Made by a program: the position numbers and the translations under genes
The notes under the pieces: generated by a model
The model's input: only the letters and a program-made list of their open reading frames with translations
Told to the model about the DNA's origin: nothing
Database searches by the model: none
In this document: piece by piece, positions 1,404 through 63,020 of the stretch
Layout of the letters: each line of letters begins with the position of its first letter
How positions within the stretch are numbered: position 1 is the stretch's first letter
Origin: Isurus oxyrinchus
Taxonomy: Eukaryota
Length of the DNA: 64,000 nt
Direction of reading: 5' to 3'
NCBI GenBank assembly: GCA_026770705.1
Contig: JANJGN010000013.1
Span: forward strand, 58,776,001 to 58,840,000

Positions 1404-1536
1404 AACAAAAAACTGCGGATGCTGGAAATCCAAAACAAAAACAAAAATAAAAATACCTGGAAAAACTCAGCAGGTCTGACAGCATCTGCAGAGAGGAACA
1501 CGATTAACGTTTCGAGTCCGTATGACTCTTCAACTG
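1404..1536 (-). mobile_element. Short hammerhead-bearing repeat (Penelope/retrozyme-like), degenerate core
   Basis: Minus strand reads CAGTTGA-A-GAGTC-atacg-GACTC-GAAA-CGTT followed by the family tail 'cagatgctgtcagacctgctgagtttttccag'. Confidence 0.75.
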
Positions 1537-1653
1537 CAATGGCCATTTGCTTAAATCTCCGAAATGCAATCAATTTCTCCCGTTTTTGTCACATGAAAGA
1601 AATTAATAGGAATGAACAAACATTCTCAGCTGAGTCAAGTACAGTTTGCGAAA

Positions 1654-1976
1654 TCACATACAGTTGGGTCTTGAGATGTATGCTCGGAACGGGTTTGCCT
1701 GAGTCTCGTGTTTAACCAGACAGGAGTAAATCTCATGTGAGTTCCAGTCTGAGGCTGACAGGGTCAGATAACTGGTCACATTGAACGTGTTGTCCGTCTT
1801 CTGCTGGATCCGACTGGTCTGAACCCCATTGCCTCTGACACTGCCATCCATAGTTCATTCAATCTCCACAGCTCCAGAGATAAAACCGCTCACCAAACAC
1901 ACCAGCGTCGCCTTGTTCTTCGCTGTGATTTGATCCGATGAAGGCGGAAGGACGGAGACCGATGGTTTCTGAGCAT
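1654..1976 (-). pseudogene. Immunoglobulin light-chain constant exon, type II/lambda-like, with premature stop
   Basis: Acceptor ttttcttttacAG ends at 1977 (phase 1). One frame reads AQKPSVSVLPPSSDQITAKNKATLVCLVSGFISGAVEIE*TMDGSVRGNGVQTSRIQQKTDNTFNVTSYLTLSASDWNSHEIYSCLVKHETQANPFRAYISRPNCM*. Both C1-set cysteines and the penultimate Cys are present; TGA at 1855-1857 replaces the conserved Trp; the F-x-P proline is lost. Confidence 0.92.
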
Positions 1977-3264
1977 CTGTAAAAGAAAAAAAGTTTAGTA
2001 GTTTTAGGGAATTCCGTTGGTTGACACATGCGATTTTTTCAAAGTAATGTAATACGAATTTTGCCATTCCATTCAATATAAGAAATATATCCCTCTGCTT
2101 TGTGGGTGTATTCATCAGAGGGAGGGAGGCCGATGGGAGTTTTGGATCTGAAGAAGCGCAGTTCTGTGTTAATGGCGACTGGAGTTGATACATTGGGTCT
2201 GTCCACGTTTACAGAAAACAAAACATTTACATCATATTTCGTAATACCACGCCAGAGTAATATAAAATACATCTTAGCGTAAATGGATTGCTGACTATAA
2301 CATGGGGATTATATATTATATAGCTGCCGTGATGGCAACAATTAGAAACAAATTGGAAACACTGAACATATATTACATTTTCTCAAATGAGTTACAATGT
2401 GATGAAATTCTGATCAGTTTGACAACAAACCATGCAACCAGATTTTACTAATGAGCCTTGATGTTATAACCCTGAACAGTGTAGGTGCACTTGCTCAGGT
2501 AGTTTCACCCTGTGAGATTCTTCCCTCACCAGTTATACACTGTCGACCAAGTTAAACTGCACACTCAAGTTGCTTGTGCAGAAGATTTATATTTATATAT
2601 CTTCTCGAGCGAGTGTTAGAATTTGGGCGAATTTGCTTCCATCATTAAAGTCGAAAGCGTAACCATTAAATATGATCAACACTATTCATACAACGGAATT
2701 GTTACTTTGAGTCACATTCTGACTTCTCTGATTACCGGTCTGTGCATCGAAAGTACCAATAACTCAGGTCCGATTTCAACAGCAGAAATAACGCGAAGTT
2801 TCTGTCCGAGGGCGCATGCTCAATACACAATCTGACAATGTGAACAGTTCGAGCACAGTGAAATAATTTAATAATGCCACTGATCTTATGTTCACACACG
2901 TTGGTTTTAAAAAGACTCTGCGCTGACGTGAAACTTGGCAATGTTTCCTTCATTTCAGAAAGGACCTGGACGTGACTCGCTGTTTAATTGCAAACCCTCA
3001 AGCGCTGCATTAGAGAAGTGTACATGTCTTACTTATGGGCAGCTTTGTTAATTCGAAGCCTTACATAGGTTGCGCCACAATTAACGAACGCGCAATAAAT
3101 GAAATGTTTCCCCACTGCGCGGCCATTCACCATGGGCGCTCAGTTTAAACCAGTATTCGGACTGAACTTCATTTGTTACTCAAAGCCGCTATATTCGGTG
3201 CAAGAATAGTTTCAGCTAAAAACCTAATATCTGACCCAGTTGCATCACGGAGCTCTACTAAAAT

Positions 3265-3670
3265 TCAAGTCAATGAGAATCGGGGGTAACTCCAAAGGTT
3301 GGAGTCATACCCATCAGAAAGGAAGATGGTTGTGGTTGTTGCAGGCCAAAGTCCCAAGGTATTGCTGCAGCAGTTCCTCAGGGTAATGACCTGGACCCAG
3401 ACATCTTCAGCTGTTTCATCAATGGCCTCCTTCATAAAGCCATAAATGAGGATGTTCACTGATAATTGCACAATTCGTCAGATACCACATCAATTTGTCA
3501 ATATACAGCAAGATCTGGACAGCATTCAGGCTTGGGCTGATATGTGGCATCTAACATTTGTGCTACACAAGTGCCAGGCAATGACCATCACCATCAAGAG
3601 AGAACCCAGCCGTCAGCCCATGATCTTGATCATTACCATTGGCCAGAAACTGAACTGGGCCAGTCATATT
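3265..3670 (+). mobile_element. CR1-group LINE (family B) RT fragment
   Basis: ORF 3446-3715 'QQDLDSIQAWADMW...HKCQAMTI' is homologous to ORF 6996-7562. Confidence 0.75.
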
Positions 3671-6200: not shown

Positions 6201-6223
6201 GCACGAGACCGGGATCTATTTCT

Positions 6224-6349
6224 CTGGAGAGTCAGACGGACTCGAAACATTAACTGTTTCTCTCTCCACAGATGCTGCCCTACCTGCTGAGTTTTTCCAG
6301 CATTTTTTGTTTTTATTTCAGATTTCCAGCATCTGCAGTATTTTGCATT
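6224..6349 (+). mobile_element. Short hammerhead-bearing repeat, 5'-truncated core
   Basis: GAGTC-agacg-GACTC-GAAA-CATT-AAC at 6229-6254 followed by the family tail. Confidence 0.75.
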
Positions 6350-6749
6350 CCCCTATTTCTCTAATCTTGGTTGCTAACCTGTGATGGTCACCGATTTGTG
6401 CTAATTGGTTCAAATAAGTCCACTAAACTTGCCCAATACTGGACAATTGGCTGAACACTGAACTTTAATAAGCCAAGCTGTACATGGATACTTTGTTTCT
6501 TGATTTTGACCAGGCACGGCCACCCCTCCACACAAGAGTAACTTTGGGGAATAGTGCAAATAGGGGTTAATTTGGGCTGTGTGCCAACCGTTTATAGGCA
6601 TGGTGGCCACCCAGTGATAGGTAATGGGGTATGATCCACACGTGCACAGTTGTAAAGGGAAGAACACAGAATTTCATCTCGGTAAAGGAGTTTGTTTGTG
6701 CACATCTAACATTTACATCGTACATGATAACATTTCAATGTTTTTGTAA

Positions 6750-9285
6750 TTCATTCACAGGATGTGGGCTTCACTTGCTGGGCCAGCATTTATTGCCCAT
6801 TCTGGCTGCCCTTGAGACGGTGGTGGTGAGCTGCCTTCTTGAAACACTGCATTCCATGTGGTGTAGGTACTCCCACAGTGCTGTTAAAAAGGGAGTTTCA
6901 GGATTTTGCCCCAGCGACAGTAATTGAACAGCGATATATTTCCAAATCCGGATGGTGAGTGACTTGGAGGGGAACTTCCAGGTGGTGGTGTTCCCTTATA
7001 TCTGCTGCCCTTGTCCTTCTAGATGGTAGTGTTCGAGGTTTTGGAAGGTGCTGTCAAAGGAGACTTGGTGAATTCCTGCATTGCATCTTATAGATGGTAC
7101 ACTGCTGCTACAATGCGTCGATGGTGGAGGGAGTGAATATTTGTGGATGTGGTGGAAATCAAGTGGACTGCTTTGTCCTGGATGGTGTCCAGCTTCTTCG
7201 GTGCTATGGGAGCTGCACTCATCCAGGCGAGTGGAGAGTATTCCATCACACTCCTGACTTGTGCCTTGTAGATGATGGATAGGCTTTGGGGAGTCAGGAG
7301 GTGAGTTACTCATTGCACGATTCCTCTGACCTGCTCTTGTAGCCACAGTATTTATGTGGCTAGTCCAGTTCAGCTTCTGGTCAATGGTAACCCCCAGGAC
7401 ATTGATAGTGAGGGATTCAGTGAAAGAAATGCCATCGAACATCAAGGGGTGATGGTTGGATTCTCTCTTGTTGGACAAGGTTATTGCGTGCCACTTGTGT
7501 GGCACGAATGTTACTTGCCACTTGTCAGCCCAAGCTTGGATATTGTCCAGGTCTTGCTGCATTTGGACATGGACTGCTTCAGTATCTGAGGAGTTGTGAT
7601 GGTGCTGAACATTGTGTAATCATCAGTGAACCTTCTGACCTTATGATGGAAGGAAGGTCATTGATGAAGCAGCTGAAGATGGTTGGGCGTAGGACATTAC
7701 CCTGAGGAACTCCTGCAGTGATGGCCTGGAGCTGAGATGACTGACCTCCAACAACCACAACCATCTTCCTTTGTGCTAGGTATGATGCCAACCAGCAGAG
7801 AGTTCTCCCCCTGATTCCCATTGACTCCAGTTTTGCTAGGGATCCTTGATGCCACACTCAGTCAAATGCTGCCTTCATGTCAAGGGCAGTCACTCTCACC
7901 TCACCTCAGGAGTTCAGTTCTTTTGTACATGCTTGAACCAAGGCTGCAATGAGGTCAGGAGCTGAGTGCCCTGGCGGAATTCAAACTGGTAATCAGTGAA
8001 CAGGTTATTGCTGAGCAAGTGCTGCTTGTTAGCATGGTTGATGAACCCTTCCATTACCTTACTGATGATGGAGAGTAGACTGATGGGGTGGTAATTGTCT
8101 GGGTTGGATTTGTCCTGCTTTTTGTGTAGAGGACATACCTGGCGACTTTCCACATTGCTGGGTAAACACCAGTGTTGTAGCTGTATGGAATCATATTGGC
8201 TGAAGACTGGCATCTGTGATGCTGGGGACATCCGGAGGAAGCCGAGATGAATCATCCGCTTGGCACTTCTGGCTGCAGATTGTTGCAAATGCACTGCTGT
8301 GCTGGACTCCTCCATCATTGAGATGGGGATATTTGTAGAGCTTCCTCCTCTGGTGAGTTGTTTAATTGTCCACCACCATCCACGACTGGATGTAGCAGGA
8401 CTGCAGAGCTTAGATCTAATCCGTCGGTTGTGGGATCTCTTAGCGCTGTCTATCACTTGCTGCTTATGCTGTTTGGCATGGAAGTAATCCTGTGTTATAG
8501 CTTCATCAGGTTGACACCTCATTTTTATGTGCTGCTGCTGGCATGCCCTCCTGCACTCTTCATTGAACCAGGGTTAATCCCCTGGCTTGATGGTAATGAT
8601 AGAGTGGGGGATATGTGGGGTCATAAGGTTACAGATTGTGTTTGAGTACAGTTATGCTCTGCTGATAGCCCACAGCACCTCATGGATGCCCAGTCTTGAG
8701 TTGCTAGAGACTTTCAACATCTACTCCATTTAGCACGGTGGTAGTGCCACACAATATGATGGAGGATACCCTCAATGTGAAAGCAGCACTTCGTTTCCAC
8801 AATGACAGTGTGGTGATCACTCCTATTGATACGGTCATTGATAGATGCATCTGCAACAGGCTGGTTGGTGAGGATCAGATCAAGTATGTTTTTCCCTCTT
8901 GTTGATGCCCTCACCACCTGTCTAACAGTTATGTCACTTAGGACTTGGCCAGCTCAGTCAGTAGTGATGCTACCGAACCACTCTTGGTGATGGACATTGA
9001 AGTCCCCCATCCAGAGTACATTCTATGCTCTTGCCACTCTCAGTGCTTCCTCTGAGTCATGTTCAGCATGGAGGAGCACTGATTCATCAGCTGAAGGAGG
9101 GCGGTATGCGATAGTCAGCAAGAGGTATCCTTGCCCATGTTTGATCTGATGCCATGAGACTTCATGGGGTCTGGAGTAGATGTTGAGGACTCCCAGGGCA
9201 AGTCCCTCCTGACTGTATATCACTGTGCCACCACCTCTACTGGATCTGTCCTGCTGGTGGAATAAGACATACCCAGGGATGGTGA
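6750..9285 (-). mobile_element. CR1-group LINE (family B): endonuclease + RT + 3' tail, frameshifted
   Basis: Minus-strand ORFs with 'YRPPSADES', 'NILDLILTN...SDH', 'NYHPISLLSIISKVME', 'GVPQG', 'QAWADKWQVTF'. Confidence 0.9.
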
Positions 9286-9489
9286 GGGACTGTGGACAGG
9301 CCTTTAAACTAACGGTGGGGAGGGTTGAGGGGAGTGTGAAGGAAGATTTAGAAAACCAAAGAAAAACATTGAGGCATCAGAACAGTATAGTAATGTGGGG
9401 AAAGACAAGCAGAGTAGGACAGGAAGAGTCAGAGAGTTTAACAAAAATTGTACATCAGCAAATAAGGACATTGCTCATAGTAGAAGTAA

Positions 9490-12400
9490 AAAAATGAAAT
9501 TAAAGGTTCTTTATCTCAATGCAAAAAGCATCTGTAATAACATAGGTGAATTAATAGAACAAACGGTGGTAACTAAGTTAGATCTAATCACCATTACAAA
9601 GACATGTTTACAAGGAGAACAAGGTTGAGAAATAAATATTCTAGAGTACAGTGATAGGGAGGCAATGACACGGTGGTATGGTCACTGGGCTAGTAATCCA
9701 GAGAATCCAGGGTAATGCTCTGGGGGCCTGGGTTCAAATCTCAGTATGGTAGATGGTGGAATTTGAATTCAATAAAAATCTGGAATCGTTTGTTGTTAAA
9801 AGCCCATCTTGTGCACAAGCAGGACAGACCCAGAATGTCCAATGGTGGCTCAGTGGTATATAGTCAGCAGGGAGTTGCCCTGGAGTCTTCAACATTGATC
9901 AACTTTGGACCCATGATGTCACATGGCATCAGAAAATCCATGGGCAAGAAAAACTTCTGTTGGTGACCAGGTATCACCAACCCCACCAAACTCTCCGTTG
10001 GTTGGAGTTGTACCTAGCACAAAGGAAGATGGTTGTTGGAGGTCAGTCAACTCAGTCCCAGGACATCACTGCAGGAGTTCTTCGGGGTAGTGTCCTAGGC
10101 CTAACCATCTTCAACTGCTTTGATGACCTTCCTTCCATCATAAGGCCAGATGTGGGGATGTCTGCAAATGATTGCACAATGTTCAGCACCATCACGACTC
10201 CTCAGATACTGAAGCAGTCCATGACCAAATGCAACAAGACCTGGACAATGGTAAAATTCATGCCACACAAGTGGCTGGCAATGACCATCTCCAACAAGAG
10301 AGAATCTAACCATCACCCCTTGGCATTGAATGGTATTACCATCGCTGAATCCTCCACTATCAACATCTGGAGGTTACCATTGATCAGAAACTGAACTGGA
10401 CTAGCCTTATAAATATGGTGGCTACAAGATTAGGTCAGAGGCTTGATATCCTGCGGTGAGTAACTCACCTCCTGACTCCACAAAGTCTGTCCGCCATCTA
10501 CACAGCACAAGTCAGGAGTGTAATGGGACACTCTCCACTTGCCTTGATGAATGCAGCTCCAACAATACTCAAGAAGCTCAATGTCATCCAAGACAAAGCA
10601 GCCCACTTGATTGGCACCCCATCCACAAATATTCATTTCGTGCACCACTGATGCACAGTAGCAGCATTGTTTATACCATCTACACAAAGCACTGCTGGAA
10701 CTTACCAAGGCTCCTTAGTCAGCACCTTCCAAATCCATGACTGCTACCATTTAAAAGGACAAGAGCATGAAAACACCACAACCTGGAAGTTCTCCTCCAA
10801 GTCACTCTCCATCCTTACTTGGAAATATATCGCCATTCCTTCACTGTCTGAATAATTGCAAATTAATGAGAATGGATCTGGCCACAGAAGGCCATGTAGT
10901 AGAATCACTAGGAGTGGAAATTTGGAATAGCAAGAATCAGAATACGCTGGTGCAAGTAGTTTGTAGGCCCCCTAACAGTAGTTATATCATCAGGCAGAGC
11001 ATTAAGCAAGATACAATTGGAGCTTGTAACAAAGGAAATGTAACAACTGTTGTGAAGGACATTACTCTTCATATAGACAGGGACAATCAAATTGGGAAGA
11101 GCGGTCTCAAAGATGAGTTTGTAGAATGTTTTCATGATAGTTTCTTGAAGCAGTACATCATGGAACTGACTAGAGATAAAGCTGTCTTAGATCTAGTATT
11201 GTGTAATGAAACAGGGTTCATTAGTAATGTGATTGTAAAAGATCCACTGGGAAATATTGATCATACCATTGAGTTCCATGTTAAGTTTGAAAGTGACAAT
11301 CACAAACAAGAATCTTGTGAGGCGAGAACTGGCTAAGTTCATTGGGTAAATAGACTAAAAGGCATGGGCGTTAACGAACAGTGGGAAACATTTAAAGAAA
11401 CACTTCAAAATATTCAACGTAAGTACATTCCGTTGAAAGACAAGCACTTAGCAAGAAAGACTCTTCCGTGGCTCACTCAGGACATAAAGGACAGTATTAG
11501 GTTAAAAGAAGACCCTTACAATGTAGCAAAAAGCAAGTATGAGGATTGGGAGTGTTTTGGAAACCAGCAGAGGACCACCAAAAAGTTGCTAAAAAGGGAA
11601 AAATTAGAATATGACAATAAACTAGCCAGAAATACAAAGACAGATTGTAAGAACCTTTAAAAGTTTTTTTTAAAAAGAGTCATGGAAGTAAATGCTGACC
11701 CCTTAGTAAAAGAAACAGGGGAAATTATCATGGGGAATGATGAAATGGCAGAGGAATTAAACAGCTACTTTGTGCCTATCGTCACAGTAGAAGACACAAA
11801 TTTCATACCAGAAACAGATGGTAACCCAGGCGCCAAAAAATGTGAGGAAGTTAAGGAAATTAATATCAGCAGAGAAAAAGTGTTGGTGAAACTTAAGGGA
11901 CTAAAATCCAACAAATCCTTGAGACCTGATGGCTGACACCCTAGGGTTCCAGAAGAGATAGCTGCAGAGATAGTGATGATGACTAGCCATGATTTTCCAA
12001 AATTCCTTAGATTCAAGAATGGCCTAATGTCAGTTGTTGGGAACATGCTAGAATCTGTTATTAAGGAAGTCTTAACAATGCACTTAATTATAACAAGTCA
12101 ACATGGTTTTGCCAAAGGAAAATCCTGTTTGACAAATTTATTAGGGTTTTTTGAGGACGTGGCTAGTAAGGTAGATGAAGGGGAACCAGTAGATGTAGTA
12201 TACATGGATTTCCAAAAGGCATTGAATAAGAACCCACATAAAAGGTTAATAGGCAAAATAAGGGCTCATGAAGTTTGCGGTAACAATTTAGCGTGGATAG
12301 AGAATCGGTTAATGGATAGAAAGCAGGGAATGGCCATAAATTGGGCTGTTTCAAGTTGGCAGACAGTGAATAGTGAAGTGCCGCAAGGTTCTGTGCTGGG

Positions 12401-13385
12401 TCCACAGCTATTTATAACCTACGTTAATGACTTAGAGGAAGAGGCAAAGAGTGATGCATCAAAGTTTGCTGATGATACCAAGCTCAGTGGGAAGGTGAGC
12501 TGTGGGGAGGACACAGAAAGGTTGCAAAGAAATATAGACAGGTTAGGTAAGTGGGCAACAAGATGGCAGATGGAATACAATGTAGTGAAGTGTGAAGTTA
12601 TTCACTTTGGTTGAAAGAATAGAAAAACAGAATACTTTTTAAAGTTTTTAAGAGTTGATGTTCAAAGAGACTTGGGTGTGCTTGTACAAGGATTGCAGAA
12701 AATTAGCATGCAGGTGCAGTAAGCAATTAGGAAGGTAAATGGCATGTTAGCCTTCATTGCAATGGGATTGGAGTACAAGAATAAAGAAACCTTGCTACAC
12801 TTGTACAACTTTTTGGTGAGACCACATCTGAAATACTGTGTACAGTTTTGGTCTCCACATTTAAGAAGGAATATGCTTGCAATGGAGGTAGTAAAGTGAA
12901 GGTTCACTAAATTGGTCCCTAGCATGAGGGGGTTGGCTTATGATGAGAGGCTCTGTAAATTGGACTTATATTAAATTGAGTTTAAAATAATGAGAGGCAA
13001 TCTCGTTGATACCTTCAGAATTCTGAAGGGGCTTGTTAGGGTAAACACTGAGAGATTGTTTCCACTGGTCAGGGAGTCTAAAACATGGGAGCACGGTCTC
13101 AGGATAAGGGGCCAATCATTTCAGATTGAGATGAGGAGAAATTACTTCACTCAAAGGATTATGAATCTTGGGAATTCTCTTACCCGAAAAGGTTGTGGAT
13201 CCTCCATTATTGAATACATTTAAGGCTGGGATAGATAGATTGTTGATCTCTCAGGGAATTAAGGGATATGGGGAGCAGACTGAAAAATGGAGTTGAAGCC
13301 CAAGATCAGCCATGATCCTATTGAATGGTGGAGCAGGCTCGATGGACTATGTGGTCTACTCCTGCTTCTATTTCTTGTGTTCTTG
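9490..13385 (+). mobile_element. CR1 LINE (family A), near-complete degenerate ORF2, interrupted by a family B copy
   Basis: 'KLKVLYLNAKSI' EN start at ~9495; EN resumes in ORF 10767-11336; RT 'QHGF..KSCLTNL..VPQGSVLGP..FADD' in ORF 11973-12614; 3' tail to ~13385. Confidence 0.9.
9657..10848 (+). mobile_element. Internally deleted family B element with tRNA-like head
   Basis: A-box-like TGACACGGTGG 9666-9676 and B-box GGTTCAAATCT 9731-9741, then EN and RT fragments homologous to 6750-9285. Confidence 0.8.
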
Positions 13386-24805: not shown

Positions 24806-24819
24806 GAAAGGCATAGGAG

Positions 24820-28320: not shown

Positions 28321-28689
28321 GCCTGTGGTCACATACCAGCTGCACATTGAGGGAATGAAAGCCCTTCAACCAAATGGTCGAATTCACAGGAGAAGGGAAT
28401 AACATATTGTTGGCACTTTGTGTATGGAAAGACTCAGTGATCTTCCTATGCAACAGTGCACTGCAAACCACGAGATATTGCTTACATCTTCAGCAACAGG
28501 TAGAAGAAGCCCGACCCATAAAATTTAAGAGCCATAGACACATTGAAAGCCACAGGCAATACTGTCCTTGCCCAGTTTGAGGCCACAGTTGTAGTTGTAG
28601 CACTTGGCAGATTTCAGTTACTAGCCCATTTGTGAAGCCATTCATGCCCCATCTGGACACAATCTTTGCCTCTTTGCTGTACCCATTCC

Positions 28690-29040
28690 CACTCTCTTTG
28701 GCTTTTGCATCATGAAATTGATTCTTAGTTAATCTCTCCCCCCCTCACCACCACCACCCGTGCCACCACCTCCCCCCCCCCCCCCCCCCCCCCCCACCCA
28801 CCCCCGGCCCCCCACACCGCAACCTACCACAGACCTTCCATTTTGTTCTTCCTAACCCCTCCCCCTTCCACTGACATAAAAACTCTTATATTTCTATCTT
28901 CCTTCCACTCTGATGAAAGGTCATTGACCTGAAATGCTAACTCTGTTCCTCTGTCCACAGACACTGCCTGACTTGCTGAGCATTTCCAACATTTTTTGTT
29001 TTGATTTCAGGTTCCCAGCATCCGCAATATTGTGCTTTTC
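28690..29040 (+). mobile_element. Longer hammerhead-bearing repeat (Penelope pLTR-like)
   Basis: CTGATGA(28910-28916)-A-AGGTC-att-GACCT-GAAA(28931-28934); cleavage-site region mutated to TGCT; upstream pyrimidine-rich part shared with 49825-49980. Confidence 0.8.
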
Positions 29041-29049
29041 TAAAAAGAA

Positions 29050-37284: not shown

Positions 37285-37810
37285 CTTCGATTCCTTCATT
37301 CAGTTCAAAACAATATGAGCCAGCGTATGTCACGCCAGTCAGCTTCCAGAGCTCAAATATTAAAGCAAGAACTATCCAATATTCGTCATATGTCTGTTTC
37401 TTTGACTTTTATTACCCGAAGGAGCGCGTCTACTTTTATTTTCAATAGATTTATTTATAAAGCCAGCATTATAAGAGCTTGTAATCATGGCAGAAGTTCG
37501 GATCTCTGGTCCTGAACCACGCGGATTTCAGCTACCCGATTCTGTCAACATCCAGGAATGGAGATGCAAAACTCTTTCCCGGCTGCTGAAGAGTAACTCG
37601 CTGTATTCATCTGCAAAGTTTAAGTACCAATCAAAGGGTCGATCCTGATTAAAGACCTTTCACTCTTTCCCTATTAGAAACCGATGTTTTGTCCACTTCC
37701 CTGGTGTTTTGAGATTTCAGCCTGCTACATTCAGCAGCTGCCCTTCCGAGTATCATTTTCCTCTTGACTCCCCAATAGTGTCGGATTATCACAACAATCT
37801 CTTCATTTAC

Positions 37811-37945
37811 AAAATGAAAAGCCTGCGGATGCTGGAATTCTGAAATAAAAACAGAAAATGCTGGAAACACTCAGCAGGTCTGGCAGCATCTGTGGAGAGA
37901 GAAATAGAGTTAACGTTTCAGGTCAATGACCATTCATCTGAACTT
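37811..37945 (-). mobile_element. Short hammerhead-bearing repeat
   Basis: Minus strand: AGTT-CAGATGA-A-TGGTC-att-GACCT-GAAA-CGTT-AACT, then the family tail. Confidence 0.8.
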
Positions 37946-38318
37946 CTCATTTATTCATTTAATTCAAGAAACTAATGAAAGAAACGTGACACTAAAATAA
38001 GTGAGAAATCCCCACCCACATGTACTGGCACGGTGAGCCTCATAGGAACATGCAGCCTCTTAACTATAACTTTGAGAATTTACTGTAACCTATGGTTCCA
38101 ATGCCTTAGGTATATCAAAGATGTGATTAGTGTTGGCGCATAATTTACACAGAATTCGGCTTTTAATACAGGTGAACAAAGCGACGTTTTTAACTTCCAC
38201 ATAAACTATGAGTTGTGCAGGTGGTTTCCACGTTTACTGAGTGACACGAACAGGCTGAGCGCACTGTGGATTTGATCCCTGATATTTTAAGCGGTGCTGA
38301 GATAGCTGGAATTGCCTC

Positions 38319-40548: not shown

Positions 40549-40657
40549 GTAATCGCTTTCATATGCGTTTGACTGCTGATAAAAGGTATTATTTTTGTCA
40601 TTATTATCATTCTTCCATGACATCCATCTAAACCACCTTGCTTGTTTCTACCTGCAG

Positions 40658-45773: not shown

Positions 45774-45945
45774 ACACAAATGTATTTGTAAAATTCATAG
45801 TAAAACTCAAAATAATTTCAGGCTGCTGATGAAGAGTTAGATTGCTTCCTTGAATTCTTAATACCTGACTGCCACGTTTTGCTAAGTTATACCACCACTA
45901 CACTGATACAAACAACTTGGAATGTGAAAAAGGTAGCATAACTAC

Positions 45946-46050
45946 AGAACAAAAACAGAATTACCTGGAAAAACTCAGCAGGTCTGACAGCATCGGCGGA
46001 GAAGAAAAGAGTTGACGTTTCGAGTCCTCATGACCCTTCGACAGAACTTG
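45946..46050 (-). mobile_element. Short hammerhead-bearing repeat with GUC cleavage triplet
   Basis: Minus strand: AGTT-CTGTCGA-A-GGGTC-atgag-GACTC-GAAA-CGTC-AACT. Confidence 0.8.
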
Positions 46051-47209
46051 AGTGTGTCCAAGACATGATGGTGACTGACAGTTAACTGCCAAGCATTGTT
46101 TGAAATTTAAACCAGGCAGTTTGACTCTGATTGGCTAAGACATTGCCCTGAGGAATGAACCAGTGAATGGCCGTCACTTATTTTGTTTATCTGAAACAGG
46201 CACAATGTGTGTATATGTTCTTTCTGTCTGCAAAAAAAGGGCCCTGTGTATTAATATATTCTGCTTCCAATACATGCAAATGCACCACACTGTAACTCCG
46301 ATTGGCAATCTTAAATTAGTTGTCAGTGTAATTCTATTGCACACTGAGGATTATTTAGCAAATGTTGTCAATCCCAGAATCACATCTAATGCTGAACACT
46401 TTGGCAGTAAAAAAAGCTCCTTTATTGAACTCAATATAAATCAGAAGGGGAGGTTGGAGACATGATAAATGATCTATGTGGCATATTCATAAGAGCTTCA
46501 CAGTGAAACAAAAGCATGTTTCTGTTAAAGTACATTTGTAGATAAAATGAGTTTTCTACACCTTAGGAATGCATCTGATTACAAAATACTTCTTGTATTA
46601 TTAGCTGTTTAGTCAATTAGTTAAGTGCACATATGGGTGTTGAAATTTTCATTGCTTACATGTTTCCAGCTGTGTATCTGTTAAATCATAATAATTCACA
46701 TCAAACTTTCTACTGATGTTAATGCTATTTTAAAAATATAACTAAATACTGTTAATATTTATCATCCATAAAACAATGTTTACATGTGTAGCTGCATCAC
46801 ATTTAATTAACAATTATCAAATTTTGCATAAATCTTTAGCATATCTCTAAGAGTCTGGAGTGCATTCACAGCGTAAATTTACAGGCTGCTTAAAATTGCT
46901 GAAGTTACAGGACATATGCAGAGTCACAGTCGAAGTCAGGAGATAAGGATGTAAAACTCTCTGGAGGAAATAGACTCCCTCCATCTGAATTTAAAACAGA
47001 ATGGAGCATATAATCCCTTTATTAGGAAACCAGGTGTAGAAAATGTTCGGGACGCCTCTCCATATATTTCAGTATTTCCAGCTCAGTATGAACCTGTAGC
47101 TAGAATCCATACCCAGACTTTGCACTGGAAGGAAAACTGTTGCTAAATTACTTCAAATATATTCATCCCCTAATCCATGCACATGTTGTCTTAAGAGATC
47201 TGTCTTCAT

Positions 47210-48305: not shown

Positions 48306-48315
48306 AGTCTGTTAC

Positions 48316-49818
48316 ATGGAACCCAATCAAATGAATAAATTGTTTGATCAGTTACAAAGAGCCAATTTGGTCATAAACTTGGCAAAAAGTAAATTTACTA
48401 AAGCAAAAATGACTTACTTGGGTCACACTGTGGGACAAAGCCAAGTGGCACCTAGAGAAGTGAAAATAAGAGACATCTTGGATTTTCCAGTGCCTAAGAC
48501 CAAACAAGAGATTCTGCGGTACACAGGCATGAGTGGATTCTATTGGAATTTGGTTCCAAATTTCAGTACTGTAGTAGCTCCCCTAACAAGCTTGTTAAAG
48601 AAAGGCAAGATACTTGAATGGGTGGGGAAGTATCAAATTGCCATTGACAGCTTGAAAGCTGATTATCGCACTGGTTTTAACAGCAGTGAATTATGCTAAG
48701 CCATTTAAACTGACTGTTGCTGCCAGAGGCATAGGTGTTGGTGCAGTGTTATTACAGAAGGACAAGAGGGGTATCGAATGGCCAGTCAGCTACTTTTCTC
48801 AAAAGTTAAATTCTTGCCAGTGGAATGAGAAACTTTGAGTTTGGTGTTGGCTCTACAACATTTTGAAATCTTCATATCCAACAACTCCTCAGAGACTATT
48901 ATTTATATGGATCATAATCCTCTAATCTTTTTCGCAAAGCTTCATGCAAAGAATCTGAGCCTATTTCATTGGAGTTTTATGCTATGACCATACAATTTGA
49001 AAATCATTCATGTAGCAGAAAGAGACAATATCATAGCAGATGCTTTGTCAGGAGTAAAAATGGAGGGACAAGAATGACTTGGTCAAAATGGACTTGTGCA
49101 GAATATGATTTATCTGGAAAGTCCTTATACATTTGATGTAAATACATTGTTACTGCTAGCATAAATCTGTGCAAGTAAAATAGAGATAGTGATGAAGAGA
49201 TTATAATAGAAAATCAAAATGCCTCTTAAAGATACCTCTTAATTTAATGTAATTTAAAGTGCATTTACTAGGTAGTGCAGACAGAAGGCCTAAAACTCTC
49301 TAGCAAGAAATCCTGCTGGGTAACTGAGTTTAGGGAACTCATGTGTTTTCTCTGAAGTTGAAGTAATAGTGAGTTTAGATTGCAGTTTTGGGTGTCTCAA
49401 GGAGAAATACCAGCTGAAGAAAAGCATCAAATGAATGCTCATAAGCCTGCCTGAAGAAAACTGTTCAAAACTGAGCTAACCCAAGCAAGAAACCTTGGCG
49501 TTGAAGCAATGGTAAATCTTCACTGGGGTTTTGTGCCTGTAACGATTGCTGAGATAAAAAGAATGGTGTGAGTTTGAATCTTTTTCTGGTGTTTGTATTG
49601 AAATCTTTCCAACATTTTTGTCTATTGTATATAGCTCATTGTGTTGTTGTATAATAAAAGTTTCACTCTGTGTTAAAAGTACACTGGCAAACTCCTGTGA
49701 GTGTGTTCAGTAACTGACCTCCACAGTTTCTAAGAAATAACAAAGTTAGATCCTGCCAAGTCACCTTCCACTCTGGGATCTGACTTGCCCAATATTAACA
49801 TCAGCTGTGTTTGTCACA
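48316..49818 (+). mobile_element. Gypsy (Gmr1-like) remnant: RT C-terminus + RNase H + 3' LTR
   Basis: ORF 48316-48699 'NLAKSKF..YLGHTVG..GMSGFY..PNFS..APLT', then PFKL..GVGAVL..DHNPL..NIIADALS; LTR end matches that of 52851-54268. Confidence 0.85.
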
Positions 49819-49824
49819 CCAATA

Positions 49825-50085
49825 CCACTTTCTTTGGCTTTTACCTCTTGAAATCTTTGTCATTTAATCTCTCCTGCCTTCTACACTATCACAGACCTTC
49901 CTTTTTGTTCTCCCTGACACCCCCCCCCCCCCACCACCCTCCGCCAACTTAAAACCTCTTACGTTTCTATCTCCCTTCTGTTCTGACGAAAGGTGATCAA
50001 CCTGAAACGTTAACTCTGCTTCTCTCCAGAGATACTACCTGACACGCTGAGTATTTCCAGCATATTTTTTGCTGTTTTTATTAAA
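49825..50085 (+). mobile_element. Longer hammerhead-bearing repeat (Penelope pLTR-like)
   Basis: Colinear with 28690-29040 including the C-rich tract. Confidence 0.8.
49980..50014 (+). ncRNA. Minimal type I hammerhead ribozyme motif, intact core
   Basis: GTT-CTGACGA-A-AGGT-gatca-ACCT-GAAA-CG-TT-AAC; stem I GTT/AAC, stem II 4 bp, palindromic AACGTT stem III. Confidence 0.7.
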
Positions 50086-52850
50086 TTCCCGTCTACTATT
50101 TTACAATATCAATGATTCGTTAGCCAGGACATACCCTGTACAAATCCCTGTAGGCTTTCTCGAACCAGTTCAAAGTTCTCTAAGTGTTCATTTACTCAGT
50201 CATTAATGATAGTTTCCAACAGTTTCCCCGCGTCAGTCTATAATTTCCGCCTTAAGCTCTCTCACTTTAAATGATGGAATTACATTGGCAATTTTCCAAT
50301 CTCAACGGACCTGAACCATAAGAACGACAGAAGATTATGGTTAAAACATCTGTAATTTCCTCACTTTCTTTAAAAGCCTGGGGTAGAAACCATCAGATTC
50401 TGGGGATTTGACAGTCTTCACTGCCATTATTTTCTCTACCATGGGTTTCCTGGAGATCATAAAGTATGCAACCGTACAAATATGCGTCAGTTATATTGTA
50501 AATAAGTATTCATGTCCCTGGCTATACAGTGTCACTCAGAGGTAGCGGAAAGTTATACCATAGACTTCGGATGCATCCGGGGTCAGTGAAGATTCGATGC
50601 TCCCTCGGTTAGTTTTAGTCTATGGAGATTACGGGCCAGACAACTGCTTTATCTTTTCAAAATGTGGCTTTTTGCAGGAAGAGGTGATACCCCACATGAT
50701 AAAAACTCACATCAATGCCAGGCTACCAAGAGTCGAATTGACTGCAGAGTCACGCTGCTATTGCATGGTTCTTGCTCTTTCACCTGCCCTCGTTCCCAGG
50801 GTTGGCTGCACGATGAACAACTTGCTCCATTTATTTTTATTCTCTGCTGCCCTCACCTGGAATGTGATGGGATTTGAAAGCGGACGTGAGGCGGCTGTCA
50901 AAGCCTTTTTCCCCGGTGTCGAAGATCAGCGGCGGTCGAATCCAACAGTTGTGCCGTCAGCGTAAAGAGACTCCGCTCAGTCAGAATAGAATAGAAGGGA
51001 GCTGACAAGCGGAACTTGCGAGCTGCTACGATGTACTTTCAAAATTTTAAAATCGTTTCGCGGCGTAATTGCCCCATTAACCGTAGCCACCTCACAAAGG
51101 CCAGGCATCTTTCTCCAACCCTCTACTGATCTTTCTAGAGTTCCCGGCTGCGTGTTCACTAGGGTCATTCCCACACTTCACGATCACACGCGAACCTACA
51201 GTTGTGGTTGAAACCAATATCAACCAGAAACTTAGTGAATAAAATACTAATACCGGAGTTAAATTGTCAATATTACAATCGCCAGAACAATTTCCGTCCG
51301 GCAACACTAGACATGAATGTGTTTAATCGAGGCTTTTTTTTCCACATGTGGGCGTCACTGGCTAGGCCAGCATTTATGGCCTATCCCTAACTGTCGCTTT
51401 CTTGAACTGCTGCAGGATGAGGGGATTGCAAAGAACATGTGGCGAATCATGAAAACAGATGGTGGCTAATAACATTTTCTCCGTGCACCGGTTATCTCAG
51501 AGTAACCCAATCATTTCCCAAATCGATTTGAGGGCAAATCTATCTTCAATGTCTAGCTTCCGATCTGCCAATTTCAATATTAAACTACCCAATATTGGAA
51601 GTAAACAACGCAAATGCTGTGATACAGGATATTATTCTGTTGTTCATATTTTGTTCCTCGGATTACTGCTGAATGTTTCTCACGTGCCACTCAAACAGGT
51701 CAGAGGTCAAGCCCCTGACCAACATTACAGAGCAAATCCTCTGAAGGCAGTAAACTTTAATGGGTAGGGGGTTACCGAGGAGCAGGTCTAATTCTTTTTC
51801 TAGTGGGTAGTCGGATATGCAAGATTTGCAGAATAGGTGAGAGACCACAATTAATAGGGCCAATAGAAGTTTAAATAATAAAATAGGCGTTATTAAACAC
51901 AATATTTCAGCATATCAATTGCAAACTTCCTCTTCATACTTGTCAATAAAGCAGGACATTCCTGTCCGGGTGTAGGGTAGGATAGTCCCCTGCTTTAGAT
52001 AAAACACAAGTCAGAAGAATGACTATTTTGTCTGCATCACTAATCACAGCACTTTACATTCATTAATTATATCTAAAGAGCTTTGGGGTGTTTCCGAGAA
52101 CAAATAGGGATGATACAATAAATAAATGAATAAATATGGATAAGTAGATTTAATGTAAAGCCCCAATAAGATGTTTATAAATACAAGTTCTTTACTTTCC
52201 ACATTCGAGGTCAATACAAAATTTCTATCAGGAATTGCTTAACAGACAACAATTAAATGTTGATCGTAATCTTCGTCCAGGTATTAGAAGTAAGGCGTTC
52301 CTGTAAAGTTTACGGTTTATGAAACAATAAAGTCATGGCTATTTATAACTTTTGGTCCACGTAGATGCCAATGGAGGTTTTCAAAACCCTATCAACCAAA
52401 TGTTGAAAACCGGTATTTCTCTCTAACAGACTCGCTGGTGGCGATGGGAGGAGCATTCCTAAAATCTCCTACCCTCAGATTAAACTGATTCTGGCAGGGA
52501 TTACAGCGGGCATCTGTGCTGTCCAGATCTTCCTCTCGGTGACATGCAGGCAATCGTTCTACAGGGCCGCTCCACCGTGTACAAAGAGTCACTGTTGTTA
52601 TTGTGCATTCTGGAGAGCTGATTGGGTAATGAGTGTGGGGAAACCGGCGAGAAACTCTACCTGAGCTCTACCTGTGCATTATGCAACAGGACTGCTGAGC
52701 GACACCCTGTGACTCTGGAACACCGAACCAATTACGGCAGTATCTAAAGATATAAAGACCCTTGCTCTGTGATGAATGTGACACAATTGAAGCACAAAAA
52801 TATTCTGAACTAATCGTTTCATTTAGAGTGTGCTGTAAATAACTCCCCTG

Positions 52851-60099: not shown

Positions 60100-61672
60100 T
60101 TAAGTAGTACCAGAGATGCAGCCGTGACCACATTGTGCCATAATTCTCCATTCAGTTAGACTATGATGTACCACCTGTCCTTCATAGAAATGTCTATGCA
60201 GAGAGATAACTTCGACCACAAATGGATGAGATAGTGGTTTGCATGTAATGTTCTTGAGGCTCTGTGAAAAAAAGGAGATGGTGGATTCTGTCAAATGGTT
60301 ACCCAAGCAGCCTACAAAAGTTACTTGACAGAATACCTCATTGTTATGATGTGGCAGATGATGTGTGCCAGGTGGATCAAATCTATGAGGGAAACTTGAT
60401 TGTGCATTTCATAACCGTTTTGCAATTTGTATTTATTTTGAGATTCATGCACTGCATCCAGAAGTAATAAGTCCACCAAGACTTTAGAGATCTTTTAAAA
60501 GTTAATATAAAAATATTTTATTAACAAAAACAGATTTCAAGCATGCACATACAACTACAAATTACTACTATAATAATAACTCCTGAAATGTCTAATTAAC
60601 CTTGCTCCCAGTTACATCCTATTTAAGGTAATGGTCCAAAAATCTATATTTTAGATTTTAAACAGATCTAGCAAATTAACACAATACACTGGACAGTGGA
60701 ATTCAAAGTGGCTCTCTCTAGCTTTGGTTTCTGTAGACAGCAGGCTTAATGCACAAATACTGGAGACTTCACACCCTTCTATTAGATCTTACAATGCATT
60801 CTTTTGACATATAGCTTCACTCTCTTTTATGTATATTTCATCCTTTTTAATATGTAAATTCCATTGTTTCATAAGTCTTGGAAACTGTATCTCCCTCATA
60901 ACATGAAAATTTTCATGTTGTCAATATTCTCATTAACCTCTTTGAAATTCAAACCTCCCTTCATCTATCTAAAAATGCAAAATCCTGTCACACCTTACAT
61001 GCTAAGACCCCAACCATGTTTACTCATTAGCATATAAAAGGCACTTCTACACCTTACTTCTTTTAACAACTTCAACTTGCAGTCTGCTGGGCTACAAAAT
61101 GTAATTAAATCACACACAGACCTAACTATTTACTGCTATAAGCCTACTTTACAATAAACCAGAAAAATATTATGAAAATTATTATACACTCATGACGCTC
61201 ATTGCAAGAACTTTCTTACAAGAACTAAGGTACATCTTGGCTAGTGATGAGAAGGCCCTTCTTGTCAGATTCTTCATGCACAAATAACGTTTTAGCATTT
61301 GCTGTTCTCCAGGCATTTATGGTGGGATGGAGGCTGTAGCCCATCTCCTTTTAGAATATGCATTTGCAAAGAATGGAAAGAGATGCAGTAGCTTTTGCTA
61401 AGGTCCATCCCAAGCAGTTCCATAACAGTAAACTCTGGTATGTATAGACTGTTCCCAGGAATGCACACTGAGACCAATATCACCACCGCTGAAAGACCGT
61501 CAACGCTGTGAAGGATGAACATGGCCTGCCTGAAACCTGTAGTTTTCCAGTGCAAGGAGTTGTCCAAGACCAAGTGTTGTAGCCTGGCAGATTCCAAGGA
61601 CTATGTACTGAGTGATGCATTGATACTTGACGGAACCAACACAAAGGCTCTAAAGGGAAAGGCCACAGTTTA
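60100..61672 (+). mobile_element. Tx1/L1-like LINE ORF2 3' part split by an LTR
   Basis: Degenerate ORF2 C-terminus continues across the insert ('cagaatacctcat'|'ctcattgcaagaactttc'); 'LFPGMHTETNI' motif; end homologous to 30185-30333. Confidence 0.7.
60342..61197 (-). mobile_element. Solo LTR with 5-bp TSD
   Basis: TGTTATGA...TCATGACG termini; CTCAT duplicated at 60337-60341 and 61198-61202. Confidence 0.85.
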
Positions 61673-61809
61673 GGACTCTACCAATATAGTGCACTGAAGG
61701 CTGGAGTTCATGTAAACACCCTGGGGCTGTATGCATCAGAAAATGCTTAAATACAATGTAAGTATAGCTGCAGGTATAATTGTCAATGGAACAACACTAG
61801 TAACATTGC

Positions 61810-62290
61810 CCAACATCACAGATGTCTCAGCTCGTCTGCAACTGAAATATTATTCATACCTTCATTACCTCGCGACTATTCCAATGCACTCGTGGCTGGT
61901 CCCCCACATTCAACCCTCAATAAAAGTAAGATCATCTAAAACTCTGCTGCCCATGTCTTAAATCGTACCTAGTCCTATTCCCCTATCACCCATGTGCGCG
62001 CTGATTGACATTAAGTCTCAATTAAGAAACATTGTTAATTTAAAATTCTCATCCTTGTTTTCAAATCTCTCTATGGTTTCACCCCTCCCCATCTATGCAA
62101 TCTCCCCTAGCACCACAACTCTGCAAGGTTTCTCCTCTCGCCTAATTGTGCATTTCCCCTGTTGTGCATCCCCGACTTTAACTGCTTCCCCGTTGGTAGC
62201 CGTGCCTTCAGTTGCCTAGGCCCCAGGCTCTGGTATGCCCTCCCTACACTTATCCACCCCTCTAGCTTCTCCTTTAAGACACTCCTTAAA
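61810..62290 (+). mobile_element. L2-like LINE 3' fragment
   Basis: Homologous to 19600-21090 ('catctaaaactctgctgccc', 'ttttaaaattctcatccttgtttt'). Confidence 0.7.
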
Positions 62291-62834
62291 ATAGTGGTCG
62301 GCAAACTATGGCTCACAGGTCACATCCGACCCGCAGGAGCTTGTAATTTGGTCCGCAGCTGCGCCATATGGTTGAATGGCCACAGAAAGTAGCTTCAGGT
62401 AAGAAAGGCAGACTTTTCTCCAGGAGTATAAGAGGAATTGTGTCCTTGGAATTGTGCCTTTGTTCAGCACCTTCAGTAAATCCGCACAGTTCAGACACTG
62501 GGACTACATATGTTAAATACAGTCTTTCTATTTCCTATCCTGAAATTCAATAAAAGGCTTTCCCACTTCTCTCGAAAATGATTTTAGACTCATTTTGTCC
62601 ATCAACCGAACAGGGCGGCTGCAGAGGAACTGAGAATACCGGCCCTCTTAGAGGACAATGTTTCCAAGATTAATTTCATCTTTGGATAAATTAGGTTGGA
62701 AGAGCAAATAAAAGGTCTGAGGGTTGGGACAGAGTTTCATGATCGCACTGAATGATGAGCAGTCTGGTCGGTTCATATAGTCTACTCCAGCTCCTAGTCC
62801 TTATGTTACTCTGCGGGTGTAGCATAATGTGATA

Positions 62835-63020
62835 AAAGCAAAATACTGCAGATGCTAGAAATCTGAAACAAAAACAGAAAATGCTAGAAAAACTCAGCAG
62901 GTCAAGCAGCATATGTGGCTCTGCAGAAGGGTCACACGGACTCGAAACGTTAACTCTGTTTCTCTCTCCCCAGATGCTGCCAGACCTGCTGAGTTTTCCA
63001 ACATTTTCTATTTTTGTTTG
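62835..63020. mobile_element. Inverted pair of hammerhead-bearing repeats
   Basis: Left arm 62835-62918 is the reverse complement of the family tail at 62969-63020; between them CTGCAGA-A-GGGTC-acacg-GACTC-GAAA-CGTT-AAC (62921-62954, +). Confidence 0.8.

What the first reader, a model, noticed from the sequence alone, without database searches (positions are those of the whole stretch)
1404..63020. Seven-copy repeat family carrying a minimal hammerhead ribozyme with co-varying stem II
Seen: copies at 1404-1536(-), 6224-6349(+), 28690-29040(+), 37811-37945(-), 45946-46050(-), 49825-50085(+) and 62835-63020 share the consensus layout (A)GTT-CUGANGA-A-[stem II]-GAAA-CG-UH-AAC(T), with individual copies mutated or truncated, plus a common ~100-nt tail. 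Stem II changes sequence but keeps pairing: GAGTC/GACTC, GGGTC/GACTC, AGGTC/GACCT, AGGT/ACCT (compensatory G-C to A-U at the closing pair). Established: minimal type I hammerheads with a palindromic, dimer-dependent stem III are typical of Penelope-like element pLTRs and non-LTR retrozymes. Inference: this is a high-copy, non-autonomous ribozyme-bearing retroelement family with at least two subfamilies, about one copy per 9 kb here and easily mislabelled as an ordinary SINE. Whether it is already described in sharks cannot be determined from the sequence.
Basis: partly seen in the sequence, partly recalled or inferred. Interest (0 to 1): 0.8.

Follow-up and report, generated by a model that had tools for sequence, protein, structure and literature searches.

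The report
Shark Penelope-type hammerhead end fragments
These are seven old, mostly broken end-pieces of a very abundant jumping gene of the Penelope type, which carries a tiny self-cutting RNA motif, and this is a known kind of element seen here in a shark.

Summary
The repeat family is real. blastn and nhmmer find eight arms at exactly the seven loci named. Laying contigs of two related species on one copy recruited 66,885 and 62,703 contigs.

The hammerhead reading holds for the family, not for each copy:
- Contigs that cross the core give a canonical CUGA(A/U)GA box. Position 6 is A in 91% by depth.
- In the window only 2 of 7 copies keep both core boxes with a stem II, and only 1 (49980-50014) is fully canonical.
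- Two copies, c1404 and c6224, are not mutated. They were cut short inside the core at insertion, and perfect 10-bp target duplications abut them.

Stem II differs between the two subfamily consensuses by two compensated pairs. Seven sequences cannot make that significant.

The anatomy is Penelope-like. It shows variable 5' truncation, 10-11-bp target duplications, and one fold-back insert with a 38-nt tail on one arm only.

No RT or GIY-YIG ORF lies in the window. I could not fetch one from elsewhere.

This is a known kind (Cervera & de la Peña 2014). The scan already holds 142 notes on it for this genome.

The parts
1396..1530 (-). Copy c1404, b-type. It starts inside the hammerhead core (first bases AAGAGTC) and carries the long tail. 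It is flanked by a perfect 10-bp duplication at 1386-1395 and 1531-1540.
6226..6352 (+). Copy c6224, b-type. It starts inside the core (GGAGAGTC) and has 101 nt from the predicted cut site to its 3' end. It is flanked by a perfect 10-bp duplication at 6216-6225 and 6353-6362.
28683..29045 (+). Long copy c28690, a-type. About 225 nt lie upstream of the hammerhead, including a poly-C tract. The core boxes are at 28910-28936, but 15.2-16.1 are mutated (GAAAUGCU), so the A15.1-U16.1 pair is lost.
37810..37946 (-). Copy c37811, a-type. It begins 2-3 nt before helix I. The core has U4 to A, and the closing pair of stem II is U.U. It has the long tail and an 8-bp flanking repeat at 37802-37809/37954-37961; a repeat of 8 bp or more occurs in 7% of random spans.
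45931..46051 (-). Copy c45946. The core is CUGUCGA (U at position 6), stem II is GGGUC/GACUC with loop AUGAG, and H17 is C. The tail is decayed and there is no significant flanking duplication.
49819..50085 (+). Long copy c49825, a-type, with about 160 nt upstream of the hammerhead.
49980..50014 (+). The only fully canonical minimal hammerhead in the window: GUU-CUGACGA-A-AGGU(gauca)ACCU-GAAA-CG-UU-AAC. The predicted cut lies between 50011 and 50012.
62829..62918 (-). Inverted arm of the fold-back insert. It holds tail sequence only and includes the 38-nt terminal extension that the forward arm lacks.
62919..63018 (+). Forward arm of the fold-back insert. It holds a b-type hammerhead (CUGCAGA, where C6 is private to this copy) and a short tail of 67 nt after the cut site.
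62818..62828 (.). Left copy of the perfect 11-bp target duplication around the fold-back insert. The right copy is at 63019-63029.
   Evidence: duplications of 11 bp or more in 2 of 2000 random spans

Best explanation
The seven loci are old, dead terminal fragments left by a Penelope-like retrotransposon lineage, or by short elements that it mobilises. The lineage is extremely abundant in this probable shark genome and in a close relative.

Each fragment is the 3' end of the unit: a minimal type I hammerhead followed by a tail of about 100 nt.

Inferred mechanism, following published work on Penelope-like elements:
- The GIY-YIG endonuclease nicks an AT-rich target.
- Reverse transcription starts inside the tail of the RNA and usually stops early. 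That gives variable 5' truncation and 10-11-bp target duplications.
- Priming from both nicked strands gives head-to-head fold-backs that carry the terminal extension on one arm only.

In active tandem elements the hammerhead would pair with a second copy through its palindromic ACGU to form helix III and cut after GUU. In this window the copies are single. Six of the seven are mutated or truncated, so none is expected to cut.

Shown here: family membership, copy number, a canonical consensus core, the target duplications, the fold-back and the one-sided extension. Inferred: the Penelope enzyme, dimer cleavage and the insertion steps.
For: Family and abundance:
- 8 arms at 7 loci.
- 66,885 (X1) and 62,703 (X13) contigs were laid at 80% likeness or more on one 190-bp copy.

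Canonical consensus:
- Place 62924 (position 6) reads A in 59,362 of 64,899 depth units, which is 91%.
- Loose-end consensuses before 62944 read CAGTT-CTGATGA-A-AGGTC-ATC-GACCT in 805 X1 contigs and 698 X13 contigs, at about 0.5 agreement.

Auxiliary min-hammerhead features match PMC4209133.

Stem II:
- 94.3% of cells pair, and 2 of 5 pairs are changed on both sides.
- RNAalifold predicts the same stem unprompted.

Insertion signatures:
- Duplications of 10 bp or more flank 3 of 7 copies, against 11 of 2000 random spans.
- The fold-back has a 38-nt extension on one arm only. This matches the 30-40-bp one-sided 'tail' and the inverted 5'-truncated copy described for Penelope-like elements (PMC8557442, passages).
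- 15 listed and 468 unlisted joints were reported, most of the listed ones being 'opposite strands'.

Geometry: the cut site lies 101-110 nt from the 3' end in duplication-bounded copies. In Anolis PAc the figure is 85-92 nt, derived from PMC11167929 passages.

Not a SINE: 0 tRNA genes and 0 Rfam hits at gathering score.
Against: - No RT-plus-GIY-YIG ORF is linked to any copy. The RT pieces in the window look like CR1/L2 by eye. GIY-YIG was absent from all 154 ORF pieces of 75 aa or more (10, 144).
- No tandem or pLTR arrangement occurs in the window.
- Rfam hammerhead models do not score, either at gathering score on the whole window or at E up to 10 on 49700-50200.
- The a-type closing pair is A-U, not the G10.1-C11.1 listed as typical in PMC4209133.
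- Covariation on the seven copies is not significant.
- No external copy could be fetched. The metagenome scan gave 44 loci with no blastn match to the family. The genome contigs and viral-contig scans gave 0.
- Cleavage was not tested.
Confidence: 0.8

Rival explanations
1. A dedicated non-autonomous element, a retrozyme-like or SINE-like 'mini-Penelope' with its own defined 5' end, borrows the Penelope enzyme. On this view the copies are not truncated copies of the autonomous element.
For: - The two long copies share a 5' edge near 28683/49819, with no similarity further upstream. Their length of about 270-360 bp is close to the 363-bp mean consensus reported for the one chondrichthyan in the 2026 preprint.
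- Five of seven copies start within a 10-nt span, 25-35 nt before the cut site.
- Copy number is very high.
Against: - Two of the five short copies start inside the core with target duplications abutting. That is truncation, not a defined start.
- No tandem units occur.
- No pol III head is present.
- The two long copies are 74% alike and have no significant flanking duplication, so their shared edge is weakly defined.
Confidence: 0.35
2. An ordinary SINE or LINE 3' end whose sequence resembles a hammerhead by chance and has no ribozyme history.
For: - Rfam finds no hammerhead.
- Only 1 of 7 copies is canonical.
- The DNA search pattern alone is weakly significant: 2 found, and 5 of 100 shuffles reach 2.
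Against: - The consensus core is canonical in both subfamilies.
- All auxiliary features of the published Penelope min-hammerhead are present.
- Stem II keeps pairing through two double changes.
- The stricter descriptor gives 2 sites against 0.03 expected.
- No tRNA, 5S or 7SL head is found.
- The LINE copies in the window do not end in this tail.
Confidence: 0.05
3. A fold-back DNA transposon (MITE) whose single-arm copies are halves.
For: One locus is an inverted repeat inside a perfect 11-bp duplication. Many 'opposite strands' joints occur in the contigs.
Against: - Six of seven loci are single arms with their own flanking duplications in three cases.
- The two arms of the fold-back are unequal, with a 38-nt extension on one only.
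- The joints lie at variable points.
- The copies share a 3' end and differ at the 5' end, which is the retroposition pattern.
Confidence: 0.03

Closest known systems
Minimal hammerhead ribozymes of metazoan Penelope-like elements (Cervera & de la Peña 2014, PMC4209133)
   Same: - Type I layout with no helix III loop and palindromic 15.2-16.2.
- One unpaired nucleotide between A9 and 10.1.
- Helix I of 4 bp.
- Consensus families within one genome that differ by compensatory changes.
- Most copies are dispersed single motifs taken for truncated elements.
   Different: - Stem II here is 5 bp, against 7-8 bp in the Schistosoma families described there.
- One subfamily closes stem II with A-U instead of G-C.
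- The host is a shark, which the parts of that paper I read do not list. It names fishes, coelacanth, Xenopus and reptiles. Its supplements were not seen.
Poseidon element PAc of Anolis carolinensis (Frangieh et al. 2024, PMC11167929)
   Same: - The hammerhead lies about 100 nt before the insertion's 3' end.
- There are two alternative ends some 30-40 nt apart (the 'tail').
- Targets are AT-rich.
- Both DNA strands are extended in vitro, which fits fold-back inserts.
- None of the 5 short copies here starts at the cut site. That fits their finding that unprocessed RNA is the substrate.
   Different: - In PAc the ORF begins at stem II.
- Here the a-type consensus has an AUG in the core and an open frame to the 3' end, but 0 of 7 protein hits to the tail peptide is a Penelope-like ORF.
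- No enzyme was examined here.
Non-LTR retrozymes of animals (Li, Clavereau & Pollet 2026 preprint, 10.64898/2026.07.22.740005)
   Same: - Short non-coding units with a type I hammerhead, related to Penelope pLTRs.
- Monomer 'solo' copies are dispersed along chromosomes.
- One chondrichthyan was reported positive.
   Different: - That definition needs tandem units, each with a hammerhead. 0 of 7 loci here are tandem.
- No circular RNA evidence exists here.
- The chondrichthyan species and its consensus sequences are in supplements I could not open.
Schistosoma Sm-alpha / Sj-alpha SINE-like elements with hammerheads
   Same: A very abundant short interspersed repeat that carries a type I hammerhead.
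   Different: Those have a pol III promoter and a canonical hammerhead with loop-loop contacts (review passages in PMC6765202; the rest is recalled). Here no pol III head is found.

Membership tests
Minimal type I hammerhead of Penelope-like elements | Conserved core boxes CUGANGA and GAAA | tested here: met
   The family consensus is canonical: A6 in 91% by depth, and loose-end consensuses read CTGATGA or CTGAAGA. In the window 2 of 7 copies keep both boxes.
Minimal type I hammerhead of Penelope-like elements | Stem II paired, with one unpaired nucleotide between A9 and 10.1 | tested here: met
   94.3% of stem II cells pair across 7 copies. The extra A is present in the 5 copies that reach it. 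RNAalifold predicts the same stem.
Minimal type I hammerhead of Penelope-like elements | G10.1-C11.1 closing pair | tested here: inconclusive
   G-C in 4 copies, A-U in 2, and U.U in 1. The a-type consensus is A-U.
Minimal type I hammerhead of Penelope-like elements | No helix III loop, and palindromic 15.1-16.1 that allows a dimer | tested here: met
   GAAACGTT is present in 4 of 7 copies (c49825, c37811, c62835, c1404). The other three read GAAATGCT, GAAACGTC and GAAACATT. In the contigs only CpG-type changes of 13-16% occur at these two places.
Minimal type I hammerhead of Penelope-like elements | Self-cleavage, as a dimer | not testable with these tools
   All runs were contigs, which cannot show RNA ends. 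No bench assay was possible.
Rfam hammerhead families | Score at or above the gathering threshold | tested here: not met
   0 hits on the window. No hammerhead appears at E up to 10 on 49700-50200. This is expected for a motif without helix III.
Penelope-like element (EN+) | RT plus GIY-YIG ORF physically joined to the repeat | tested here: not met
   No GIY-YIG in 154 ORF pieces of 75 aa or more. The RT pieces look like CR1/L2. Unchecked notes from this scan report such links elsewhere in the genome.
Penelope-like element (EN+) | High 5' truncation with a common 3' end | tested here: met
   The 5' ends lie 25, 26, 32, 33, 35, 193 or more, and 256 or more nt before the cut site.
Penelope-like element (EN+) | Inverted 5'-truncated copy adjacent, with a 30-40-bp tail at one end only | tested here: met
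   Seen at 1 of 7 loci: 62829-63018, with a 38-nt extension on the inverted arm only, inside an 11-bp duplication. 'Opposite strands' joints occur in the contigs.
Penelope-like element (EN+) | Partial tandem (pLTR) arrangement | tested here: not met
   0 of 7 loci.
Non-LTR retrozyme | Tandem repeat with a complete hammerhead in at least two consecutive units | tested here: not met
   0 of 7 loci. None of the 13 TRF rows carries the motif.
SINE | Pol III-derived head (tRNA, 5S or 7SL), and an A-rich or microsatellite 3' end | tested here: not met
   ARAGORN finds 0 genes. Rfam finds 0 hits. The 3' ends run straight into the target duplications.

The most novel reading that the evidence does not exclude
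The short copies may not be random truncations. They could be run-off cDNAs made when the Penelope reverse transcriptase starts internally at the tail nearest the 5' end of a transcript that begins in the pLTR just upstream of helix I. On that view their clustered 5' ends mark the element's transcription start.

Two further observations point the same way. Stem II pairing is maintained through two double changes between subfamilies. None of the five short copies starts at the cut site. Together these suggest the hammerhead fold is kept for something other than trimming the template, such as protein recognition or start-codon context.
Probability: 0.15. Interest if true: 0.6.

Novelty: new member of a known kind. 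Interest (0 to 1): 0.27.

Why it matters
The finding adds a cartilaginous-fish instance, at a very high copy number of tens of thousands of contigs per run, to the known link between minimal hammerheads and Penelope-like elements.

It gives repeat annotators a concrete anatomy, so these pieces are not filed as SINEs or exonised into gene models. One Heterodontus francisci model carries the tail peptide at both ends.

It does not change what is known about how such elements work. The clustered 5' ends and the subfamily-level compensatory changes are cheap to test genome-wide. They bear on the open question of what the hammerhead does for these elements.

Tried and rejected
- Rfam at gathering score on the window and at E up to 10 on one copy: no hammerhead. 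The only hit was a chance SNORD65 match.
- Metagenome pattern scan: 44 loci. None has any blastn match to the family at E up to 1e-6, so I treat them as chance 19-mer matches and did not use them.
- Genome contigs and viral-contig scans with a 22-base tail pattern: 0 matches each.
- Word-based protein search with a 61-aa ORF across the fold-back: 1 candidate, none scored.
- Full HMMER search with the 39-aa tail-frame peptide: 7 hits.
  - Four are short ORFs or gene models that contain repeat copies (P0003, P0004, P0006, P0007).
  - Three are unrelated repetitive proteins (P0001, P0002, P0005).
  - None is a Penelope-like ORF, so the idea that the tail encodes the N-terminus of the element's protein is unsupported.
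- Thermodynamic folding of monomers and homodimers did not reproduce the hammerhead pairing scheme. I do not use it.
- Covariation counting on 7 copies is not significant.
- Rejected as related: the weak nhmmer hit at 63163-63216 and the C-rich hits at about 37065 and 44865.
- The RNA question stays open. X21 and X24 are only guessed to be RNA and are held as contigs. They lay 3,692 of 562,185 and 966 of 577,923 records on the copy, which does not show transcription or cleavage.
- Literature on sharks:
  - 'hammerhead ribozyme' + 'Penelope-like' + 'shark' and 'retrozyme' + 'shark' return only papers that use 'shark' for the shape of the motif, or in passing.
  - 'Penelope' + 'elasmobranch' and related terms return genome papers that only list Penelope among repeats (PMC8455134, passages).
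  - So I found no description of this family in sharks in the held library.
- Not seen: Dfam and Repbase, the supplements of PMC4209133 and of the 2026 preprint, and Lünse et al. 2017, which is not held.

Full report
WHAT IS THERE

blastn with each copy as query hits only those seven loci, apart from two C-rich low-complexity spots. A MAFFT alignment (A1) shows a shared block of about 135 nt. An nhmmer profile of that block finds 8 arms at the 7 loci (E from 2.6e-17 to 9.7e-38) and nothing else credible. Pairwise identity over 81-84 shared columns is 66-89%, so the copies are old.

THE HAMMERHEAD READING, COPY BY COPY

| Copy | State of the motif |
|---|---|
| c49825 (49980-50014) | Complete and canonical |
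| c28690 | Keeps both core boxes and stem II, but reads GAAAUGCU, so the A15.1-U16.1 pair is lost |
| c37811 | U4 to A, and U.U at the closing pair of stem II |
| c45946 | U at position 6 |
| c62835 | C at position 6 |
| c1404 | Starts inside the core |
| c6224 | Starts inside the core |

For c1404 and c6224, perfect 10-bp direct repeats abut the first element base (1386-1395/1531-1540 and 6216-6225/6353-6362). Repeats of 10 bp or more occur in 11 of 2000 random spans.

A structural descriptor finds 2 sites in the window against 0.03 expected. The simpler DNA search pattern finds 2 against 0.43 expected. Rfam finds no hammerhead, which is expected for a motif with no helix III.

THE FAMILY CONSENSUS

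I laid contigs of four runs on 62700-63150 at 80% likeness or more.

| Run | What it is | Contigs laid |
|---|---|---|
| X1 | DNA, same species label as the window | 66,885 |
| X13 | DNA, a relative that shares about a third of the 31-mers | 62,703 |
| X21 | Guessed to be RNA | 3,692 |
| X24 | Guessed to be RNA | 966 |

- Among contigs that cross the core, place 62924 (position 6) reads A in 91% by depth. The C there is private to this copy, and the b-type consensus is CUGAAGA.
- Place 62930 (position 10.2) reads A in 71% and G in the rest. Its partner, U11.2, is constant.
- Loop place 62935 reads U in 91%.
- CpG-type changes of 12-17% are seen at the three CpGs of the motif.
- Contigs of the other subfamily are clipped at 62944. 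The clipped letters give the consensus CAGTT-CTGATGA-A-AGGTC-ATC-GACCT (805 contigs in X1 and 698 in X13, at about 0.5 agreement).

Both subfamily consensuses are therefore canonical hammerheads.

The tool warns that depth is not copy number. I use the contig counts only as an order of magnitude.

COVARIATION

The a-type stem II is AGGUC/GACCU. The b-type is GAGUC/GACUC, with a G.U variant. Pairs 10.1-11.1 and 10.2-11.2 are both changed on both sides, and pairing is kept.

On the seven window copies:
- 94.3% of stem II cells pair, and 2 of 5 pairs show double changes.
- The whole-structure score is not beyond shuffles (59 of 500 as high).
- Sliding the partner drops pairing from 81.4% to 19-47%.
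- RNAalifold finds the same stem without being told.

This is good evidence that the stem is real. It is weak evidence of repeated selection, because it may reflect one or two events.

WHAT KIND OF ELEMENT

The copies share their 3' end and differ at the 5' end. Their starts lie 25, 26, 32, 33, 35, 193 or more, and 256 or more nt before the predicted cut site. From the cut site to the 3' end is 101-110 nt in the three copies bounded by flanking repeats.

The locus at 62829-63018 is one insertion inside a perfect 11-bp duplication. It joins an inverted tail arm of 90 nt to a forward arm of 100 nt. The arms align over 52 nt, and the inverted arm alone carries a further 38 nt. Many contigs show joints between opposite strands at variable points. 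Family homology ends at 62831-62834, with AT-rich and poorly agreeing sequence beyond.

These features match published accounts of Penelope-like elements:
- Frequent 5' truncation, an adjacent inverted 5'-truncated copy, a 30-40-bp tail at one end only, and a hammerhead in the terminal repeat are listed in PMC8557442 (passages).
- Internal initiation of reverse transcription, extension of both target strands and AT-rich targets were shown in vitro for Anolis PAc in PMC11167929 (passages).
- The auxiliary hammerhead features match those listed in PMC4209133 (parts 1-2 of 4).

WHAT IS MISSING

No Penelope enzyme is in the window. The RT fragments look like CR1/L2 LINEs, and none of the 154 ORF pieces of 75 aa or more hits GIY-YIG. 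No locus is tandem.

I could not reach other parts of the genome:
- The pattern scans of the three collections gave nothing usable.
- The word-based protein search was blank.

Earlier notes of this scan report GIY-YIG Penelope ORFs joined to this hammerhead elsewhere in the genome. They also describe the fold-backs as usual Penelope by-products. Those are unchecked notes, and I did not test the ORF link.

One earlier follow-up states that nearly every copy has U at position 6. My contig data disagree for the copies that align to c62835: A is at 91%, and no other letter reaches the 10% listing threshold. The U6 form, which c45946 carries here, may be a separate subfamily.

A SIDE IDEA, TESTED AND NOT SUPPORTED

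The a-type consensus has AUG at A6-U7-G8 and an open frame to the 3' end. This recalls PAc, where the ORF starts at stem II. A full HMMER search with the 39-aa tail-frame peptide gave 7 hits, none of them a Penelope-like ORF. One hit is a Heterodontus francisci gene model that carries the tail peptide at both ends. That shows the family is present in that shark and can contaminate gene models.

RIVALS

- A SINE is unlikely. There is no pol III head, no A-rich or microsatellite end, and the starts are variable.
- A MITE is unlikely. Six of seven loci are single arms, and the fold-back is asymmetric.
- Truncated autonomous copies versus a dedicated non-autonomous mini-element cannot be decided here. 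The shared 5' edge of the two long copies and the clustering of five starts within 10 nt keep the second option open.

COMPARISON AND NOVELTY

Minimal hammerheads in Penelope repeats have been known since 2014 and were reported in fishes, coelacanth, amphibians and reptiles (PMC4209133). A 2026 preprint reports retrozymes in one chondrichthyan and relates retrozymes to Penelope pLTRs. The species is named in a supplement I could not open.

My searches of the held library found no description of this family in sharks. Dfam and Repbase were not available. I file this as a new member of a known kind.

VERDICT

The interpretation as a Penelope-type hammerhead family is well supported by anatomy and by the family consensus. 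'Non-autonomous' and 'selected covariation' remain open. Interest is low to moderate.

Noticed in passing
window 1657-2208 (-): An open frame reads like an immunoglobulin light-chain constant domain. One of the 144 ORF pieces hits Pfam C1-set, and I assign the hit to this piece from its translation. Copy c1404 lies just 3' of it.
   Followed up: partly
window 40335-40908 (+): A HES-like gene. Pfam HLH and Hairy_orange hits occur among the ORF pieces. Two adjacent frames carry a bHLH segment and a C-terminal WRPW.
   Followed up: partly
window 6400-9400 (-), 9800-13300 (+), 31800-35100 (+): Three decayed LINE copies with RVT_1 hits. By eye they show a CR1/L2-type motif after the RT start. None ends in the hammerhead tail.
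   Followed up: partly
window 48304-48835 (+): An open frame that by eye looks like the RT-RNase H junction of a Ty3/gypsy-type pol. It lies about 1 kb upstream of copy c49825. I did not confirm it separately.
   Followed up: no
protein P0006 (XP_067897430.1, Heterodontus francisci): A 276-aa gene model named as a phosphoinositide kinase carries the repeat's tail peptide near both ends. It is probably an exonised or mis-annotated copy.
   Followed up: partly
alignment A2 columns 58-64 with 120-126 (for example window 6271-6277 with about 6327-6333): RNAalifold pairs GAUGCUG near the start of the tail with CAGCAUC near its end. Most of these pairs do not vary. This could be the structure where reverse transcription starts, but that is untested.
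   Followed up: no
window 28740-28815 and 49915-49940: Both long copies carry an expanded poly-C/CCA tract about 100-170 nt upstream of the hammerhead. Similar G/C-rich tracts at 37065-37128 and 44865-44942 gave the only off-family blast hits.
   Followed up: no
runs X21 and X24 laid on window 62700-63150: In the two runs guessed to be RNA, 0.66% and 0.17% of records contain the repeat, against 0.18% in the DNA run X1. The contigs that carry it are up to 7 kb long and hold it on either strand. This fits copies embedded in longer transcripts or DNA carry-over, and it does not show expression of the element itself.
   Followed up: partly
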